A stretch of DNA of 63,647 nt, filler included, from Octopus bimaculoides (GCF_001194135.2; 7 parts of 7 records of this genome joined end to end with filler, not necessarily neighbours in it); one strand, 5' to 3'. Counted from the first letter of the whole stretch, positions 40,787-49,354 are shown. Notes: generated by a model from the sequence alone, not told the origin. Made by a program: numbers and translations.

Positions 40787-41088
40787 NNNNNNNNNNNNNN
40801 NNNNNNNNNNNNNNNNNNNNNNNNNNNNNNTTAATTAATTAANNNNNNNNNNNNNNNNNNNNNNNNNNNNNNNNNNNNNNNNNNNNATAGAATATGAGAG
40901 GTTTAGTTGATTTGTGATTTAAACGAATAGGTACGCTGAGTAAGTGCTATAGCTGGTCGACTGTTAGGTACCAAGATCACCGCTAAGGGATACATTTAGG
41001 GTTTCGTATATCATATTAAAGGAAAAATCAAAAACCAAGGCAGAACGAGTCGTTTAGAATAATTTAATTAGGGTAACGTGAATTTGAA

Positions 41089-41164
41089 GTCTTACAGTCG
41101 TTTCTGGGATAACCCAAGTGGTTGGTTAGCATGTCTACACACTGGGCATTCCATCATCAGAGAC
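41089..41164 (-). ncRNA. Type I hammerhead-ribozyme motif with a long stem II
   Basis: GTCT-CTGATGA-[stem II]-GAAA-C-GACT-G-TA^-AGAC. Stem I is GTCT/AGAC, stem II pairs TGGAATGCCCAGTG with CACTTGGGTTATCCCA, and the cleavage triplet is GUA. Confidence 0.75.
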
Positions 41165-41639
41165 AATGTATGAATATTTTAGACGGGGAAAATTTACAGT
41201 TTATAAGGAATAAAATAGAAGAATAAAGAGTAAAGGTAGTTCGGAGAATATAGGCAGGGGATAATGTTTACAATGCATCTTTTTCCAGAAGATAGGGATG
41301 TTGGTGGGTACTTACAGGTCGTTACTTAAAATTCCAGGTAAATCCAAGCGGTATTTTGGCAGTATTTTGAATGATGTATTCACATTGTAAATGTGTATAT
41401 AGAGCGAGCAAGTAGGATACACATAAATGGGTTTTGTGAGAGGGTGTATATGGGAGATAGAAGAGAAAGATACAGAGACAGAAAGACAGGAGAGAAGAAA
41501 AAGAGAGAGGAGAGAGAAGAAAGGAATAAAAATAAGATAGGAGTAAAAGAGTAAAAACATTAAAATAAAATAATAAATAAAATAAAAGTAAAGGTAATGA
41601 TAGAGATATCATAAATAGATGATAGATCACTGGCCACTA

Positions 41640-41815
41640 TACATTCTTCTTTTCTCTCCTTGTTTCTTTCTATGTTCCTTTCTGTGGAAGAGCGTAGGCT
41701 CGAAACATTAAAGACTTTTTCACTTCCCGGGCGTTATACTAATACATCTGTTTGTTGTCTACACCACCTGTTTTCGTCTTTTGTTGTTTTTTTTTTGTGA
41801 ATTCCCCCTATATAT
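41640..41815 (+). mobile_element. Penelope-like terminal repeat fragment with a hammerhead-like remnant (41682-41715)
   Basis: ctgtggaa gagc gtag gctc GAAA cattaaagac, the same layout as the motif at 49405. Confidence 0.4.
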
Positions 41816-42408
41816 GTAATATCTTGGACTAATGAGTATGCGTCAATTAGTGTGCAGATGTGTTGAATAAAATCTTATTGATATTTAAAACTAAAGACAA
41901 TCGTAGCAATACCTCATTCTTTAAATGAAGCAGGCTAATAGCAACATGGCTGCCCACACTCAAGATATTTAGCGAGACACCACTTTATGTATCAATGTGC
42001 TTGGTGTGACCCAGACTGCAAGATTGATGTAACACAATATAATGTACAACATCCCATCCATAAAGGACATTCGGGGGATGGGTCAAATTATCGTCGTACA
42101 AACTAACGAATAATACCAATTCAATCTTCTCTTTATTTAATCGATCAGTTATATATGTGTGTATATATGTATGTATGCGTATATACATACATATATACAC
42201 GCATACACACATACATATATACATACATACACGCATACATACATGCATACATGCATACATACATACATGACAGGCTGCTGGCATTTATAGTGTTAAGCAC
42301 TTTTGATATGCAAATTAGGGACTCCTTCATAGAGTAACTGCTGCATTTGATGAGTATATAAACAATTTGGCTGCTTGTTTCTCTAGTGACTGTCACAATG
42401 ATGTCGAC

Positions 42409-42451
42409 GCCTCTGATGAAAACCCAATAAGGTTCGAAAATCGATTAAGGT
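42409..42451 (+). ncRNA. Minimal type I hammerhead-ribozyme motif with a palindromic loop III
   Basis: GCCT-CTGATGA-AAACC caataa GGTTC-GAAA-A-TCGA-T-TA^-AGGT. The core is intact, stem I is GCCT/AGGT, ATCGAT is a palindrome, and there is an A.C mismatch at the base of stem II. Confidence 0.65.
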
Positions 42452-42521
42452 TGTTCATCATTTTTTTCAGTCTGCAGAGAAATGGCTATAATTTTCCCTG
42501 TTTATCATTATACCAATATGT

Positions 42522-42559
<38 letters not shown>

Positions 42560-42800
42560 CAAAGGTTTTAATTTCTTCATTTCATCCGATCATGAAGAAG
42601 TAATTATTTGTGATACACAATGTGACTCAATATAATATATCATTGTTTAAATTCATGCTACCCGCCATGTTAAAATATTAATCTGACCCATAAAGTATTG
42701 AAATGATCGTAACGTAAGAATATGTATGATACCAATACCACCATTCATGTACTTATGTGTGTGTGTGTAAAAGTAATATTTATATTCTTCTTTTTTTCAG

Positions 42801-42875
42801 TAATACATCAGTATGTGCAAAATACTACTTTAACCGACTACACCGAAGTTTACCCCAACTTTGAGGTTTGCGAAG
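42801..42875 (+). CDS. Candidate internal exon of the mucin-like gene (IHQYVQNTTLTDYTEVYPNFEVCE)
   Basis: Acceptor ttatattcttctttttttcag and donor GAAG|GTAATC. It is 75 nt, only the phase-1 frame is open, and it joins 48089 as G|GA (Gly). Confidence 0.6.
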
Positions 42876-42966
42876 GTAATCAGTATTTATATGTATGAAT
42901 ATATGTTCGTACGTATATGCCTGTGCGTAAATATATGTACGAATACGTCATATATATATGTGTGTT

Positions 42967-43007
<41 letters not shown>

Positions 43008-43026
43008 ATGTAAGTATACATCTGTA

Positions 43027-43064
<38 letters not shown>

Positions 43065-43474
43065 NNNNNNNNNNNNNNNNNNNNNNNNNNNNNNNNNNNN
43101 NNNNNNNNNNNNNNNNNNNNNNNNNNNNNNNNNNNNNNNNNNNNNNNNNNNNNNNNNNNNNNNNNNNNNNNNNNNNNNNNNNNNNNNNNNNNNNNNNNNN
43201 NNNNNNNNNNNNNNNNNNNNNNNNNNNNNNNNNNNNNNNNNNNNNNNNNNNNNNNNNNNNNNNNNNNNNNNNNNNNNNNNNNNNNNNNNNNNNNNNNNNN
43301 NNNNNNNNNNNNNNNNNNNNNNNNNNNNNNNNNNNNNNNNNNNNNNNNNNNNNTATATGTATGTATGTATGTATATATGTATAAGGTAATAATTTTATTC
43401 TCAAACGCAGGATAATATTAATAATATAAATAACATGAACAGGATAAATTATCCATATATTGTAGAAAAATCTG

Positions 43475-43655
43475 TCGGTGACCAGCCATGAGACTCAAAC
43501 TCACGTCCCTGTGATTACGCATCCAGTGCTTTACCATTAATCTAAACTGACCCAACGATTTATACATCCTGAATTTACAGAAGAATTTGTCGTTGGTAAA
43601 ACACTTGACGCGTAATCACAGGGATGTGAGCTTGAATCTTATGGTTGGCTGCCGA
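43475..43655. repeat. Inverted pair of tRNA-like sequences (62-bp arms, 57-nt spacer)
   Basis: Arms 43475-43536 and 43594-43655 match at 51/62 positions. The minus copy has A-box-like and B-box-like motifs and a CGT anticodon-like loop. Confidence 0.8.
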
Positions 43656-44293
43656 TTATTAGCATTATCCTGTGTTTGAGAATGAAATTATTTCCTTATC
43701 TTTATCTTTCAATACATCTTAACGCTTCTAAAGCAAACTTTGTTTCTTGACTTTCAACATAGGTTGAATTTAATAAATTTATGTATGTATATATATGTAT
43801 ATGAATTTGTTTTATGTATATATACTTATATTAACATACACACATATTTTCGTTATATTTAAATACCTAACATGTTCGAGTACATTAGAACGTATGAAAG
43901 AACCTTCAGATGTGAAAATAGTCCCGGCAGAAAATGCTTCTCTTAGACATAGGTGAAAATATATAATGGACTGTGAATGGCGTCACGTTCTTGTTCGTTA
44001 GAACACGTGCGTGTCTGCGTTATTTATGTTTTTTTATCAGTTCGATATCTACGGACGCCAGATTTAACAACGGGAAAGAAAGAATGCAGAAATGCGTAAA
44101 TCGCACGATCTAGTAACTTCATGCACAGTCCATTCTGTGTTTCTACACATGAATAGAGGAAAGATACCACCCAGCACTATTTCCTCAGCGGAAGCTTTTC
44201 TCTCGTCCGAATGCACTCACACGTGTTAAATAAGACTTTACATGAATATATATTATTCGATGTTGCTTTGTTTGACATCATGTGTATGAGTGT

Positions 44294-44325
<32 letters not shown>

Positions 44326-44359
44326 CGAAGTATGTATGCATATGTATATATTTATATCT

Positions 44360-44800
44360 TTTATTTTTTACTTGTTTGAGTCATAAGACTGCGGTCATGC
44401 TGGGGTTGCCTTGAAGAATTTTTAATAGAATGAATCGGTACCATTACTTTTTTTTAAAGCCTTGTACTTATTCTATCGGCCTCTTTGGCCAAGGCGATAA
44501 GTTACGGAGACATAAACACACTGATACCGATTGTCAAGCAGTGGTGGGGACAAAGGCTGGAACAAACACACATACACACACATTGATATAGATAGATAGA
44601 TAGATAGATATATAGATAGATAGATAGATAGATAGATACAATGAGCTTCTTTCAGTTTCTGTCAACCAAATCCATTCACAAGTTTTGTAGTCGACCCGAG
44701 ACTATAGTAGAAAACACATGAACAATGTCCCACGCAGTGGGACAGAAACCGGAATCATGTGGTTGAAAAGCAAGCTTGTTACCACACAGCAGCTACACCT
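44360..44800 (-). mobile_element. SINE family B, near full length, internal (GATA)n
   Basis: The tail, the microsatellite and the head (cccacgcagtgggacagaaaccggaatcatgtgg) are all present on the minus strand. Confidence 0.88.
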
Positions 44801-45005
44801 TCACTACATGTGTGTGTGTGCGTGTGTGCGCGCGCGTGTGTGTGTGTGTTTATGTGTATGCATGTATATATGTATATATTTTCCTCTTTTTTATGTATGT
44901 ATATTCTTTGATCATTTGTTTTTGTCGAACAAACCGACTCGAATGTTATANNNNNNNNNNATATATATATATATATATGTATATATATACCTCGTTCAGA
45001 GATTT

Positions 45006-45046
<41 letters not shown>

Positions 45047-46699
45047 TCATATATTTGTCAGTAAAGTGGGTATATTAATTGAAGTGTACAGTATTACATA
45101 TCAATTACGGCCAATCATACCGGTCGGTTCTGTAGTGAAGTTCAACGGAGTGTTGGGTAACAATCCGATTATGTAACCATGCACTCTTCAGAGATGATAG
45201 TTACATAGACATAAATATTGACATATATATAGATACATATGAAATATAGATGTTTGCGTAAATATATATAATTTGCTTGGTTTATACTCCAACAATAATA
45301 TTTATCATTTCTCCCTCCAGGCCTTATATTAACTGTAGTTATAACTGGCAAACATTCTGACATACATACATTCACATATCCATTCATACATACATATACA
45401 TATAACTCATACAGACACATACATTCGTCCTCTATACGGATTAGTCTGAAAAGTTGAGCAACAAGAGCGCTTACACATAATACGCACAATACGATAATCT
45501 CCTCCCAAAGGTTCTTGTTAATCTGTTTTCCAAAGAATATTTTCTTAATAGTTCATAACTTTTAAGAAAATCTTTCTTTAAATGTTGTTACTGTACTAAG
45601 TTTTTTCAAAAATACAATATATATATATATANNNNNNNNNNNNNNNNNNNNNNNNNNNNNNNNNNNNNNNNNNNNNNNNNNNNNNNNNNNNNNNNNNNNN
45701 NNNNNNNNNNNNNNNNNNNNNNNNNNNNNNNNNNNNNNNNNNNNNNNNNNNNNNNNNNNNNNNNNNNNNNNNNNNNNNNNNNNNNNNNNNNNNNNNNNNN
45801 NNNNNNNNNNNNNNNNNNNNNNNNNNNNNNNNNNNNNNNNNNNNNNNNNNNNNNNNNNNNNNNNNNNNNNNNNNNNNNNNNNNNNNNNNNNNNNNNNNNN
45901 NNNNNNNNNNNNNNNNNNNNNNNNNNNNNNNNNNNNNNNNNNNNNNNNNNNNNNNNNNNNNNNNNNNNNNNNNNNNNNNNNNNNNNNNNNNNNNNNNNNN
46001 NNNNNNNNNNNNNNNNNNNNNNNNNNNNNNNNNNNNNNNNNNNNNNNNNNNNNNNNNNNNNNNNNNNNNNNNNNNNNNNNNNNNNNNNNNNNNNNNNNNN
46101 NNNNNNNNNNNNNNNNNNNNNNNNNNNNNNNNNNNNNNNNNNNNNNNNNNNNNNNNNNNNNNNNNNNNNNNNNNNNNNNNNNNNNNNNNNNNNNNNNNNN
46201 NNNNNNNNNNNNNNNNNNNNNNNNNNNNNNNNNNNNNNNNNNNNNNNNNNNNNNNNNNNNNNNNNNNNNNNNNNNNNNNNNNNNNNNNNNNNNNNNNNNN
46301 NNNNNNNNNNNNNNNNNNNNNNNNNNNNNNNNNNNNNNNNNNNNNNNATATATATATATATATATATATATAAACACTTACTCACAGGCACGCACGTATA
46401 CATGCACGCACACACACACACACGTACACACACGCACGTAAGCAAGCACATGCACTTCACAATGAGTGTGCTGAATCGAATGTATTGCAGATTGACTGGG
46501 TTTGCATTTTGGTCACTCCTTTCCCCTCGAAACAGATGTACGGTGAAGTCAGTTAAATTGTCAAGGTACTCTTTTTCTGTTTTAACAAATGTGTGTTCTT
46601 TACTTATTCCCGGATCTCAATACAGAGTGACGTGCAAAAATTTACCGCAGTTATGCGCCCTTATTTACTTTATCTCCCTTTGTTCCGATTTCAGTTAGT

Positions 46700-46861
46700 G
46701 AACAGGTGTGGCTGTATGTTAAGAAGCTTGCATCCTAACCACATGGTTCTGGGTTCAGTCGCACTGAACCTGGGCAAGTGTCTACTACTATAGTCTCGGG
46801 CCGACCAAAGCCTTGTGAGTGGATCTGTGGCAGGCAGAAACTGAAAGAAGCCCGTCGTATA

Positions 46862-46932
<71 letters not shown>

Positions 46933-47180
46933 CATCGTGTCTGTGTCATCGTGTCTATGTGTCATTGTGTACTATATTTGTACCCCACCACCGCTTGACA
47001 ACCGCGGTTGGCGTATTTATGTCCCCGTAACTTAGCGTTTCGGCATAAGAGAGCGACAGAACAAGTACCAGGCTTAACAAAATATAACTACTAGGGTCGA
47101 TTCATTCGACTGAAATTTCTTCAAGGCGGTGCTCCTGCATGGCCGCACTCTAATGACTGATACAAGTAAAAGGTAAGCGA
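46700..47180 (+). mobile_element. SINE family B, near full length, internal (TG)n
   Basis: caggtgtggctgtatgttaagaagcttgc..gggttcagtcgcactg..gaaactgaaagaagcccgtcg..ggcggtgctcctgcatggccgcac. Confidence 0.9.
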
Positions 47181-48088
47181 AAAAAAAACATACTAAAATG
47201 AAAATTATGGTGAAACGAAAATAACGGAGCATTATACTAATATCGAGCAGCAGTTTGTTCCGTCTGTCGAATTCTGATTGCGATGTCGGGTATTTTGACA
47301 CTGATGTTTATTTTTAGTGTGGTAAATAGTCGTACATGTTTCGTTGTCTGTTAACAATGTTATGGAGGTTGCGTATGTAAACAATGACCACGCTAAAATT
47401 TGAGTCTTCAAATGTTTTATTAGCTGGTGTTGTCTGTAAGTGCAAGTGGACATCTAATAAATAAATGGAACACTGTTAATATAGAATAACGATTAGGAAT
47501 TTTCAGGGTATGACTTGTTGGATGATATTAAGAAAGTAGCGCAAGGAATTTAAATCACTGCATATAATTAATGTCATAGGTATGTTACCTATGAAAAGCA
47601 AAAGGGAGGAAGGGACTATTTCACTTGGAAGGTGACACAGATATCTCTTCGATAACTGAGTGCTTCTGGCCTGAGTTTGAATTTGCCAGCTTTTACAGCT
47701 GTAAGCGACCTTTCTAGAACCTTCGGTCAAACAGTTTAGTGGGAAAATTCGCACGCTTCCTCTGCGGTTTCCAGCCACAACCTCAATAGATCAATAAAAG
47801 CTGATTGGTCGAGTTATATTCACGTAAGTGTTAATACCTTTTCTGTGACACTTTTCCTTTCATAAGAATACATTAATTCGTGATTCTGAATTGGGAAAAT
47901 CTAAGAGCTATGGTTCAAAGCTCAGCAGGGTACTCGCTACGCGTTTTTGTAAAATTAATAAAGTAAGTTCTACTCATGAATCAGTGTTAACAGACCCACA
48001 CAGACACATGCATACCACGCAACTGACAAAGCCCTAAAATTTATAACAGTTTATATTTACAATGATATTTTTATATCTTTTTTAACAG

Positions 48089-49092
48089 GATACGAAGAGT
48101 CCAGCAACCTTTCCGAAACCTCGACTCAGACTCCGTGTCCCTCATCACCTGTGGAATCAACCGCTGAAATGACATCCATGCTCACTTACTCGTCAAGTTA
48201 CGAAACAGACGTTTCCAGTTTGAGCTCTTTCATACATGCTACGTCATGCTCCTCCACTTTAGAATCAACCCAAATTCCGTCAGACATACAAACGACATCA
48301 AACTGGCCTGAAAAAACATCGACCGAATACACTAGCTTTTCCGTTTTCTCTACGACTCTCGAAATATATTCCAGTACTACACAGAGCTTAGATTGCAATG
48401 GTGGTGCCTGTACGAGCAGCAGCAGCGGAAGCAGCGAAAGCAGCGGAAGCAGCGGAAGCAGCGGAAGCAGCGAAAGCAGCGAAAGCAGCGGAAGCAGCGG
48501 AAGCAGCGGAAGCAGCGAAAGCAGCGGAAGCAGCGGAAGCANNNNNNNNNNCAGCAGCGGAAGCAGCGAAAGCAGCGGAAGCAGCGGAAGCAGCGGAAGC
48601 AGCGAAAGCAGCGGAAGCAGCGGAAGCAGCGAAAGCAGCGGAAGCAGCGGAAGCAGCAATAATGTTGTGACCACCAGTACGACCAGTAACCCCAGTAGCA
48701 GCACCACTAGCGGCAGCAACGGGGACAGCAGCAACAGCATCGGTGTCGGCAGCAGCGACAGTTTCGTTAGCAGCACCACCATCATCAGCAGCAGCAGTAG
48801 GCTGTGCAAATGCCAATGTCCCGTGTCTGAAACGGTCATGAACGAGAATGAGCAAAAATCGTTTAAACGTAAAATGAGTTCTGTGGCTGCTTATATATCG
48901 ATACCTAAGAAAAATCTCAGTGCCACCATTAGACGTAAAACCAGCGCCCAAGACGACAGACCGTCTGCTCAAGGCATTGGCTATCTCGGTGTTGCCTTTC
49001 TTGGCGCTGTTTTCGGTGGCCTTATTATTATGGACCTCGGTTCATTAGCCAATCAGTTTGTAATTTTGTATAGAAACCTAACCGGACGGTAA
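48089..49092 (+). CDS. Last coding exon of a single-pass membrane mucin/proteoglycan-like protein
   Basis: Acceptor tttttatatcttttttaacag (phase 1), then an open frame of about 334 codons: Ser/Thr-rich stalk, (SSG/SSE)n, CKCQC, basic juxtamembrane motif, TM helix GIGYLGVAFLGAVFGGLIIM (48973-49032), short tail and TAA. A 10-N gap lies at 48542-48551. Confidence 0.85.
48415..48657 (+). repeat. Coding 9-bp tandem repeat AGCAGCGGA / AGCAGCGAA
   Basis: Two unit variants are interspersed and encode Ser-Ser-Gly and Ser-Ser-Glu. True copy number is uncertain because of the gap. Confidence 0.95.
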
Positions 49093-49144
49093 AAGATACG
49101 CAACTACATACATACACGCACGCACAAACACACACATACCTACA

Positions 49145-49189
<45 letters not shown>

Positions 49190-49354
49190 ACACACACACA
49201 CACACATATATATNNNNNNNNNNNNNNNNNNNNNNNNNNNNNNNNNNNNNNNNNNNNTTAATTAATTAANNNNNNNNNNNNNNNNNNNNNNNNNNNNNNN
49301 NNNNNNNNNNNNNTATATATATATCTGTGTGTGTGTGTGTGTGTGTGTGTGTGC

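What the first reader, a model, noticed from the sequence alone, without database searches (positions are those of the whole stretch)
48805..49092. Cys-x-Cys-x-Cys + 'LS..RRK.SA.DDRPSA..IG' + TM: an apparently unnamed membrane-anchor module
Seen: CKCQCP, a helical spacer of about 25 residues, ISIPKKNLSATIRRKTSAQDDRPSAQGIGYLG, a hydrophobic helix ending in D, and a short tail. From recollection (not a search), very similar C-termini recur in many uncharacterised mollusc proteins with unrelated ectodomains (mucin, lectin, WSC-type), and I know no named domain or function for it. Inference: a conserved lophotrochozoan display module. CxCxC may mediate disulfide oligomerisation, and the basic RRK/DDR segment may be a cleavage, shedding or partner-binding site. 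This is the best candidate in the window for an undescribed system.
Basis: partly seen in the sequence, partly recalled or inferred. Interest (0 to 1): 0.72.

Follow-up and report, generated by a model that had tools for sequence, protein, structure and literature searches.

The report
Unnamed mollusc stalk-and-membrane-anchor module
The end of this gene encodes a conserved stalk, membrane-spanning helix and short tail that many mollusc cell-surface proteins with unrelated outer domains share, which no domain library names and whose function is untested.

Summary
Window 48805-49092 encodes CKCQCP, a helix, LSATIRRKTSAQDDRPSAQGIGYLG, a hydrophobic helix ending in Asp, an 18-residue tail and a stop. 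It is the end of a terminal exon (48089-49092) whose first part is a Ser/Thr-rich, mucin-like stretch.

A search of 1.84 billion representative proteins gave 567 hits at E<=1e-3. In 143 of the best 150 the module lies at the C-terminus. C1, C3, C5, S39, R43, S47, D50, R52, S54, G59, G62 and D77 are invariant or nearly so.

All 29 hits that carry an organism name are gastropods or bivalves, so only Mollusca is shown, not Lophotrochozoa. Most are called uncharacterized or hypothetical. The attached outer domains are C-type lectin, IgGFc-binding, PAN, WSC, EGF and TSP1. Minimal members are just a signal peptide plus the module.

Pfam, PDB sequences, Foldseek and a literature search give no name for it.

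Best reading (inferred): a type I stalk-TM unit that forms disulfide-linked parallel oligomers. The conserved TM face R52-A55-G59-G62-L66-F70-L73-D77 would be the packing or partner surface. Cleavage at the basic segment remains possible but untested.

The parts
48068..48088 (+). Polypyrimidine tract and AG splice acceptor of the terminal exon. The intron is phase 1.
   Evidence: Sequence tttttatatcttttttaacAG. The tract and AG are conserved in related-species genomic contig L001, although the first exon bases differ. No other exon was detected in 40887-48088 by tblastn with 150 family members.
48089..49092 (+). Terminal coding exon including the stop codon. The start of the gene (signal peptide and any globular ectodomain) lies outside the piece.
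   Evidence: Open frame 47980-49089 with TAA at 49090-92. P0001, an ORF on contig L001, is collinear with it.
48089..48804 (+). Ser/Thr-rich, mucin-like stretch that precedes the module.
   Evidence: Translation. Across the family the 40 residues upstream of CxCxC are 19.6% Thr and 15.7% Ser.
48421..48657 (+). 9-nt tandem array AGCAGCGGA (about 26 copies, encoding SSGSSE/SSGSSG) with a 10-N assembly gap at 48542-48551.
   Evidence: Tandem Repeats Finder and the sequence itself. The array is absent from the related-species copy P0001. Frame continuity across the gap is inferred.
48805..48819 (+). Cys-x-Cys-x-Cys (CKCQC), module residues 1-5.
   Evidence: Invariant in the 42-sequence alignment A1. 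At least 90% conserved in 80 longer members.
48844..48897 (+). Stalk helix, module residues 14-31. It is charged, with a narrow hydrophobic stripe at 20, 24, 27 and 31 (then 33, 38, 42).
   Evidence: AlphaFold2 predicts helix H14-31. Column hydrophobicity is and conservation.
48916..48969 (+). Juxtamembrane polar/basic motif LSATIRRKTSAQDDRPSA, module residues 38-55. Near-invariant residues are S39, R43, S47, D50, R52 and S54.
   Evidence: AlphaFold2 predicts a short helix 39-46 and a loop 47-52.
48970..49047 (+). Transmembrane helix QGIGYLGVAFLGAVFGGLIIMDLGSL, residues 56-81. G59, G62 and D77 (codon 49033-49035) are invariant.
   Evidence: Conservation has a helical period with its peak at 95-100 degrees (12/2000 shuffles reach it for residues 55-82; 47/2000 for 52-82). 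The conserved face is R52, A55, G59, G62, L66, F70, L73, D77. AlphaFold2 predicts one continuous helix 53-93 with pLDDT 88-98.
49048..49092 (+). Short cytoplasmic tail ANQFVILYRNLTGR plus the stop codon.
   Evidence: Across the family the tail after D77 has a median of 22 residues, quartiles 18-28.

Best explanation
Shown:
- The finding is the C-terminal module of a type I membrane protein. It belongs to a large mollusc family of such modules that has no name.
- The module consists of CxCxC, a charged helix of about 18 residues, the motif L-S-[SA]-T-[IV]-R-[KR]-K-x-S-A-x-D-x-R-P-S-A, a glycine-rich TM helix with an invariant Asp near its cytoplasmic end, and a tail of about 20 residues.
- It is joined through a Ser/Thr-rich linker to unrelated extracellular domains (C-type lectin, IgGFc-binding, PAN, WSC, EGF, TSP1), or it stands alone behind a signal peptide.

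Inferred mechanism:
- The module is more than a passive anchor. It is an assembly unit that holds the ectodomains in parallel, disulfide-linked dimers or higher oligomers.
- The three alternate cysteines would lie on one side of an extended strand and cross-link neighbouring chains.
- The amphipathic stalk helix and the conserved TM face (A55xxxG59xxG62...L66...F70...L73...D77) would pack helix against helix.
- The result would be multivalent display of lectin or mucin-like domains on mollusc epithelial or haemocyte surfaces.
- The invariant outward-facing polar residues (S39, R43, S47, D50, S54) and the R52/D77 pair are then most likely a docking surface for a conserved partner or processing enzyme.

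The confidence of 0.45 is for the inferred oligomerisation mechanism. That the module is a real, conserved, unnamed type I anchor family I put at about 0.9.
For: Family and position:
- 567 representatives at E<=1e-3.
- The module is C-terminal in 143 of the best 150.

Conservation:
- D50, R52, G59 and D77 are 100% conserved. C1/C3/C5, S39, R43, S47, S54 and G62 are at least 90% conserved in longer members.
- Overall identity is only about 30-55%, across gastropods and bivalves. That pattern indicates purifying selection rather than recent copying.

Type I topology:
- Signal peptides and extracellular Pfam domains lie upstream.
- An N-x-S/T sequon lies between CxCxC and the helix in 62 of 102 members.

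Oligomer:
- Minimal members with a clear signal peptide (P0010, P0090, P0158, P0133) have exactly three ectodomain cysteines, the CxCxC itself. An odd number cannot all pair within one chain.
- Hydrophobic positions 20, 24, 27, 31, 38, 42 and 78, 81, 85, 88, 92 follow 3-4 spacing between highly charged positions.
- TM conservation is periodic at about 100 degrees per residue and lies on one face.
- AlphaFold2 predicts helices 14-31, 39-46 and 53-93, mean pLDDT 86.
Against: - No experiment or multimer model supports oligomerisation.
- The hydrophobic periodicity of the stalk helix is not significant against shuffles (828/5000 for residues 17-33; 1563/5000 for 15-34). The heptad stripe breaks at residues 34 and 43-54.
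- The three cysteines could instead be free, bind a metal, or bond to another protein.
- A conserved TM face fits a heterologous partner equally well.
- The window's own copy lacks the N-x-T sequon. Its N-terminus, and hence its signal peptide, is not in the piece.
Confidence: 0.45

Rival explanations
1. Shedding or processing module. The invariant basic/acidic juxtamembrane segment (R43-K-K-x-S47-A-x-D50-x-R52-P-S54-A), together with the small, glycine-rich start of the TM helix, is the recognition site of a conserved protease (a sheddase, or a rhomboid-like intramembrane protease). Cleavage would release lectin or mucin ectodomains into mucus or haemolymph.
For: - A near-invariant polar motif lies directly outside the membrane, followed by S-A-x-x-[IV]-G-x-x-G at the top of the TM helix.
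- The ectodomains are of mucosal or secreted type: mucin-like, IgGFc-binding, lectin.
- From general knowledge: rhomboid substrates carry small, helix-destabilising residues at the outer end of the TM.
Against: - The would-be P1 residue at position 45 is Lys in 70% and Arg in 8% of members, so this is not a furin-type R-x-[KR]-R site.
- Conservation runs along the whole TM face down to D77, which a cleavage site alone does not explain.
- There is no proteomic or experimental evidence.
Confidence: 0.2
2. Receptor-adaptor coupling unit. The conserved TM face, with R52 at the outer boundary and D77 near the inner boundary, recruits a common partner subunit that signals for the short-tailed receptors. 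The partner may be one of the stand-alone module proteins with longer tails. This would work like DAP12- or FcRgamma-coupled receptors in vertebrates.
For: - There is an invariant charged residue in the membrane and a short tail, median 22 residues after D77.
- Stand-alone members carry about 45-residue tails. The Haliotis ones include TTYHSV, a TxYxxV-type motif.
- Oyster transmembrane C-type lectins are reported to signal through Syk/ERK (review PMC13027682). Whether those proteins carry this module was not tested.
Against: - No partner with a complementary basic TM residue was identified.
- D77 lies at the cytoplasmic end of the helix, not in the outer third as in DAP12-type adaptors.
- No ITAM was found in 146 tails, and YxxPhi in only 20.
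Confidence: 0.2
3. Passive anchor spread by exon shuffling. The similarity only reflects common descent of a convenient 3' terminal exon and has no function beyond spanning the membrane.
For: - In the window and in Gigantopelta L003 the module occupies one terminal exon behind a phase-1 intron.
- Tandem gene copies exist.
Against: - Twelve positions, mostly polar, stay invariant or nearly so while the rest has drifted to 30-55% identity across mollusc classes.
- A plain anchor needs only hydrophobicity.
Confidence: 0.08
4. Reverse topology. The basic segment is cytosolic and phosphorylated (RRKTS and KRKMS fit basophilic-kinase consensus sites), and the hydrophobic helix is a tail anchor.
For: - Lys and Arg cluster N-terminal of the helix: net charge +2.3 for residues 40-54.
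- R-[KR]-K-x-S47 fits a PKA/PKC-type consensus (general knowledge).
Against: - Full-length members have signal peptides and extracellular domains (Lectin_C, PAN, WSC, EGF, TSP1) upstream, with no other TM segment.
- Conserved N-glycosylation sequons sit next to CxCxC.
- The C-terminal flank is also basic, +2.0.
Confidence: 0.03

Closest known systems
DAP12/DAP10/FcR-gamma/CD3-zeta type disulfide-linked single-pass subunits
   Same: - The minimal members have the same layout: signal peptide, very short ectodomain whose only cysteines lie just outside the membrane, a TM helix with an invariant Asp, and a short tail.
   Different: - No sequence or Pfam relationship.
- The Asp lies at the cytoplasmic end of the helix.
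- There is no ITAM.
- A roughly 50-residue structured stalk with its own invariant motif is present.
- Most members carry large ectodomains themselves.
Syndecan C-terminal region (Pfam PF01034)
   Same: - A Ser/Gly/Thr-rich ectodomain, basic residues next to the membrane, a TM helix with small-xxx-small motifs that dimerises, and a short tail.
- The window's SSGSSE repeats resemble glycosaminoglycan-attachment regions.
   Different: - No Pfam match even at E<=10.
- Syndecans have no CxCxC.
- The syndecan C1/V/C2 tail motifs are absent.
- This family carries lectin, PAN and IgGFc-binding domains.
Coiled-coil oligomerisation stalks locked by neighbouring cysteines (COMP, thrombospondin, immunoglobulin hinge CPPCP)
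   Same: - A cluster of closely spaced cysteines next to an amphipathic helix, which could give covalent parallel oligomers.
   Different: - Those are soluble or hinge regions that are not fused to a TM helix.
- The heptad stripe here is only about three turns long and not statistically established.
Apicomplexan micronemal adhesins (TRAP/MIC family) with a shared TM and tail cleaved by rhomboids
   Same: - Many different adhesive ectodomains share one conserved TM-proximal region with small residues at the outer end of the helix.
   Different: - A different phylum and no sequence similarity.
- Cleavage here is purely hypothetical.

Membership tests
Unnamed mollusc CxCxC-RKKxSAxDxRPSA-TM module (family defined here) | Cys-x-Cys-x-Cys about 33 residues before the LS motif | tested here: met
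   CKCQC at 48805-48819. The C5-to-S39 spacing is 34 in the window; the family median is 33.
Unnamed mollusc CxCxC-RKKxSAxDxRPSA-TM module (family defined here) | Invariant S39, R43, S47, D50, R52, S54, G59, G62 and D77 | tested here: met
   All nine are present in the window sequence.
Unnamed mollusc CxCxC-RKKxSAxDxRPSA-TM module (family defined here) | Position at the C-terminus with a short tail after the TM helix | tested here: met
   18 residues follow D77 before the stop codon. The family median is 22.
Unnamed mollusc CxCxC-RKKxSAxDxRPSA-TM module (family defined here) | N-x-S/T sequon between CxCxC and the stalk helix (present in 62 of 102 members) | tested here: not met
   The window has VMNENEQ with no sequon there. 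It does have N37-L-S39. This is a frequent feature, not a defining one.
Unnamed mollusc CxCxC-RKKxSAxDxRPSA-TM module (family defined here) | Signal peptide and extracellular N-terminal part (type I topology) | not testable with these tools
   The 5' exons of the window's gene are outside the piece. The feature is shown for relatives P0003, P0009, P0010, P0015 and P0090.
Syndecan (PF01034) | Match to the Pfam model of the TM helix and C1-V-C2 tail | tested here: not met
   No Pfam family at E<=10 for the 95 residues. Only scattered single-member chance matches for 42 modules.
GPI-anchor signal | Hydrophobic stretch at the extreme C-terminus with no charged tail after it | tested here: not met
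   A polar, basic tail of median 22 residues follows D77, with net charge +2.0 for residues 82-95.
Tail-anchored proteins | No signal peptide, with a cytosolic N-terminal domain | tested here: not met
   Relatives have signal peptides and extracellular domains.
Furin-type cleavage site ahead of a TM helix (as in ZP-domain precursors) | R-x-[KR]-R motif, and a ZP domain upstream | tested here: not met
   Position 45 is Lys in 70% and Arg in 8% of members. No ZP domain appears in 80 members.
DAP12-type signalling adaptors | Asp in the outer part of the TM helix plus a cytoplasmic ITAM | tested here: not met
   D77 is 18 residues after G59, at the inner end of the helix. There are 0 ITAMs in 146 tails.
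Cys-locked coiled-coil stalk | Continuous a/d heptad pattern next to the cysteines | tested here: inconclusive
   Hydrophobic positions at 20, 24, 27, 31, 38 and 42 are visible, but the periodicity is not significant against shuffles (828/5000 for residues 17-33; 1563/5000 for 15-34).

The most novel reading that the evidence does not exclude
The module is the common chassis of a mollusc-specific modular surface-receptor system. Hundreds of lectin, PAN, IgGFc-binding and mucin ectodomains would plug into one invariant stalk-TM unit. Through its R52...D77 face, that unit would assemble with stand-alone module proteins or another adaptor, and so couple glycan recognition to signalling or regulated shedding. 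This would be an independent invention of the vertebrate receptor-plus-DAP12/FcR-gamma logic.
Probability: 0.12. Interest if true: 0.8.

Novelty: new variant of a known kind. Interest (0 to 1): 0.5.

Why it matters
- Hundreds of mollusc protein clusters end in this module, including many of the membrane-bound C-type lectins and mucin-like proteins thought to act at mucosal and immune surfaces. Databases label them only 'uncharacterized'.
- Defining the module as a domain would improve annotation of oyster, mussel, abalone, snail and probably cephalopod genomes.
- It would give a handle for finding all surface-displayed members.
- It points to specific residues to test for how these animals assemble, signal from or shed their surface lectins: the three cysteines, R43, D50, R52, G59/G62 and D77.

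Tried and rejected
- The word-index protein search with the 95 residues found nothing. With the profile A1 it returned only 24 proteins, all of 176 aa or less. It missed longer proteins whose exact segments were in the query alignment, so it was of little use for taxonomic range.
- Pfam at E<=10 on the window protein, Pfam on 80 full-length members and Pfam on 42 isolated modules gave no family over the module.
- PDB sequence searches and a Foldseek search of the PDB with the AlphaFold2 model found nothing.
- Literature searches found no description of the module. I tried the motif strings RKKTSA, DDRPSA and similar, CxCxC with mollusc, general terms and the run accessions of the nearest contig.
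- Rfam found nothing in the piece.
- tblastn with 150 family members found no further exon in 40887-48088.
- P0002, a 1676-aa protein with 14 repeats of '...TGSNDRPSAQVVAV...', was rejected as a chance match inflated by repeats.
- P0001 (85% identical) is not a full-length protein. It is an ORF called on a genomic contig of a related species, and its 'start' lies in the intron.
- The long antisense ORFs over 48198-48972 are by-products of the AGC/GGA repeat.

Full report
**What is in the window**

The piece 40887-49213 is AT-rich eukaryotic DNA full of microsatellites, with three runs of N. It contains one convincing coding stretch, on the + strand. That frame is open from 47980 to 49089 and ends with TAA at 49090-92.

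A polypyrimidine tract and AG at 48068-48088 mark a 3' splice site, so the terminal exon runs 48089-49092 and follows a phase-1 intron. A 1,065-nt genomic contig from a related species (L001) aligns through the intron end, and the tract and AG are conserved there. tblastn with 150 family members found no other exon upstream. The signal peptide and any globular ectodomain of this gene therefore lie outside the piece.

The exon first encodes a Ser/Thr-rich stretch. This includes a 9-nt array (AGCAGCGGA, about 26 copies, 48421-48657) that is interrupted by a 10-N gap.

- CKCQCP
- about 24 residues that include a predicted helix
- ISIPKKNLSATIRRKTSAQDDRPSAQGIGYLG
- VAFLGAVFGGLIIMD
- an 18-residue tail

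**Is it more than chance?**

Yes. phmmer with the 95 residues, read against all 1.84 billion representative proteins, gave 567 proteins at E<=1e-3 and 25 at E<=1e-10.
- One high-scoring hit, P0002, is a repeat protein with 14 copies of '...NDRPSAQVVAV...' and is spurious.
- The other 149 of the best 150 align over the motif and the TM helix.
- In 143 of the 150 the match ends within 60 residues of the C-terminus.
- Three proteins with two modules (P0004, P0049, P0095) look like fused models of tandem genes.

**Anatomy and conservation**

In the alignment of 150 segments, the 42-sequence alignment A1 and 80 longer proteins:
- D50, R52, G59 and D77 are invariant.
- C1, C3, C5, S39, R43, S47, S54 and G62 are at least 90% conserved among sequences that cover them.
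- The rest has drifted to about 30-55% identity.

The consensus reads C-x-C-x-C ... (N-x-T) ... EEL..KI.EIKKEL.V.K..LS[SA]T[IV]R[KR]K[TI]SA.D.RPSA..[IV]GY.G[VI]..L..VFG.I.L[LM]D[LIF]..L.

Other measurements:
- The spacing from C5 to S39 has a median of 33 residues.
- An N-glycosylation sequon lies between CxCxC and the helix in 62 of 102 members.
- The tail after D77 has a median of 22 residues.

AlphaFold2 with A1 (mean pLDDT 86) predicts helices 14-31 and 39-46, a loop 47-52, and one long helix 53-93.

Conservation in residues 52-82 peaks at the alpha-helical period of 95-100 degrees per residue. Only 12 of 2000 shuffles reach the observed value for residues 55-82, and 47 of 2000 for 52-82. 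The conserved residues lie on one face: R52, A55, G59, G62, L66, F70, L73, D77.

Hydrophobic columns sit at 20, 24, 27, 31, 33, 38, 42 and again at 78, 81, 85, 88, 92, between strongly charged columns. The periodicity of the short stalk helix is not significant on its own.

**Who has it, and what is attached**

All 29 hits that carry an organism name are molluscs.
- Gastropods: Haliotis, Lottia, Patella, Littorina, Nucella, Batillaria, Babylonia, Gigantopelta.
- Bivalves: Saccostrea, Mytilus, Pinctada, Pecten, Argopecten, Ruditapes, Tegillarca, Mactra, Mya, Potamilus.

Most are named 'uncharacterized' or 'hypothetical'. The rest are named only after their ectodomain or by loose similarity (for example 'mucin-1-like', 'Klrk1p').

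Among 80 members of at least 180 aa, Pfam finds Lectin_C in 20, IgGFc_binding in 9, PAN in 8, WSC in 2, EGF in 2 and TSP1 in 1. It never finds a family over the module. The 40 residues before CxCxC are 35% Thr+Ser.

Minimal members consist of a signal peptide, 15-25 residues, the module and a tail of about 45 residues. Examples are P0010 (Gigantopelta) and P0090/P0158 (Haliotis).

Gene structure varies:
- In Gigantopelta the module occupies one terminal exon behind a signal-peptide exon. The intron is phase 1, as in the window.
- In Ruditapes an intron splits the module after LSST.
- In Tegillarca, two module genes and a C-type lectin gene lie within 11 kb.

**Topology**

Signal peptides, extracellular domain types and conserved sequons place everything before the hydrophobic helix outside the cell. 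That makes these type I proteins. Both flanks of the helix are basic (+2.3 and +2.0), so the positive-inside rule does not decide the matter. The tail-anchor reading and the GPI-signal reading both fail (see the membership tests).

**How it most likely works**

The pattern of selection argues against a passive anchor: invariant polar residues outside the membrane, one conserved TM face, and an invariant Asp in the membrane.

The best-supported mechanism is covalent parallel self-assembly. This is an inference. The evidence:
- The four minimal members with clear signal peptides have exactly three ectodomain cysteines, the CxCxC itself. An odd number cannot be satisfied within one chain.
- Alternate residues of an extended strand point the same way. 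This geometry is a structural argument, not a tool result. It would let the three cysteines ladder onto a neighbouring chain.
- The stalk helix has a narrow hydrophobic stripe.
- The TM face contains a small-xxx-small motif, A55xxxG59xxG62.

The remaining invariant residues (S39, R43, S47, D50, S54, and the R52/D77 pair at the two ends of the membrane span) probably form a docking site. Neither was tested.

The basic triplet is not furin-like, since position 45 is Lys in 70% of members. No ITAM occurs in 146 tails.

**Comparison with known systems**

No Pfam model, PDB sequence or PDB fold matches. Literature searches, including searches for the motif strings themselves, found no description.

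In function it resembles several things, but it meets the defining features of none of them:
- DAP12-type disulfide-linked single-pass subunits
- syndecan C-termini
- Cys-locked coiled-coil stalks
- the shared TM regions of apicomplexan adhesins

A review describes the oyster transmembrane C-type lectins CgCLec-TM1 and CgCLec-HTM as signalling receptors (PMC13027682). Whether they carry this module could not be checked here.

**Verdict**

- 'Lophotrochozoan' is not shown. Only Mollusca is documented, and only the best 150 of 567 hits could be inspected.
- The proposed functions remain hypotheses. Oligomerisation has indirect support and cleavage has none.

I rate this an undescribed domain of a familiar general kind, a stalk plus single-pass anchor. 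It is of moderate interest, mainly for annotating and experimentally dissecting mollusc surface lectins and mucin-like proteins.

Noticed in passing
window 48421-48657 (gap 48542-48551): A 9-nt AGCAGCGGA array (about 26 copies, encoding SSGSSE/SSGSSG) lies inside the exon and contains a 10-N assembly gap. The related-species copy (P0001/L001) has no such array, so it is a recent species-specific expansion. Frame continuity across the gap is inferred. The Ser-Gly pairs flanked by Glu resemble glycosaminoglycan-attachment sites.
   Followed up: partly
P0010, P0090, P0158, P0133 (relatives); L003 10001-17581: Stand-alone members consist of a signal peptide, 15-25 residues, the module and a tail of about 45 residues, with CxCxC as the only ectodomain cysteines. 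The Haliotis tails carry TTYHSV, a TxYxxV-type tyrosine motif.
   Followed up: partly
L006 10304-10813 and 12883-13137 (Ruditapes): Here an intron splits the module right after LSST (profile position 41). In the window and in Gigantopelta L003 the whole module is in one terminal exon behind a phase-1 intron.
   Followed up: partly
L004 1-11061 (Tegillarca); P0004, P0049, P0095: Module genes occur in tandem. Two module genes and a Lectin_C gene lie within 11 kb in Tegillarca. Three database proteins with two modules look like fused models of neighbouring genes. The separate Lectin_C and module genes in L004 may be one gene that the annotation split.
   Followed up: no
L005 minus strand 2361-2708 (Haliotis cracherodii): A partial module copy (profile positions 1-45, nearly identical to the P0090 exon) then diverges. 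It is probably a pseudo-exon or a duplicated fragment.
   Followed up: no
P0002 (1676 aa): The second-best hit of the representative search is a repeat protein with 14 copies of '...TVTGSNDRPSAQVVAV...'. Its score is the sum of chance matches to DDRPSAQ and the following hydrophobic stretch. It is not a family member.
   Followed up: yes
window 48198-48972 minus strand and other + frames: Long ORFs on the opposite strand and in the other frames (up to 213 aa, rich in L/P or A/E/K) are by-products of the AGC/GGA repeat, not genes.
   Followed up: yes
module tails of 146 relatives: 61 of 146 tails have a cysteine 4-20 residues after D77, a position typical of juxtamembrane palmitoylation.
   Followed up: no
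(tool behaviour): The word-index protein search returned only proteins of 176 aa or less. It missed longer proteins whose exact module segments were in the query alignment. Its silence should not be read as absence.
   Followed up: no
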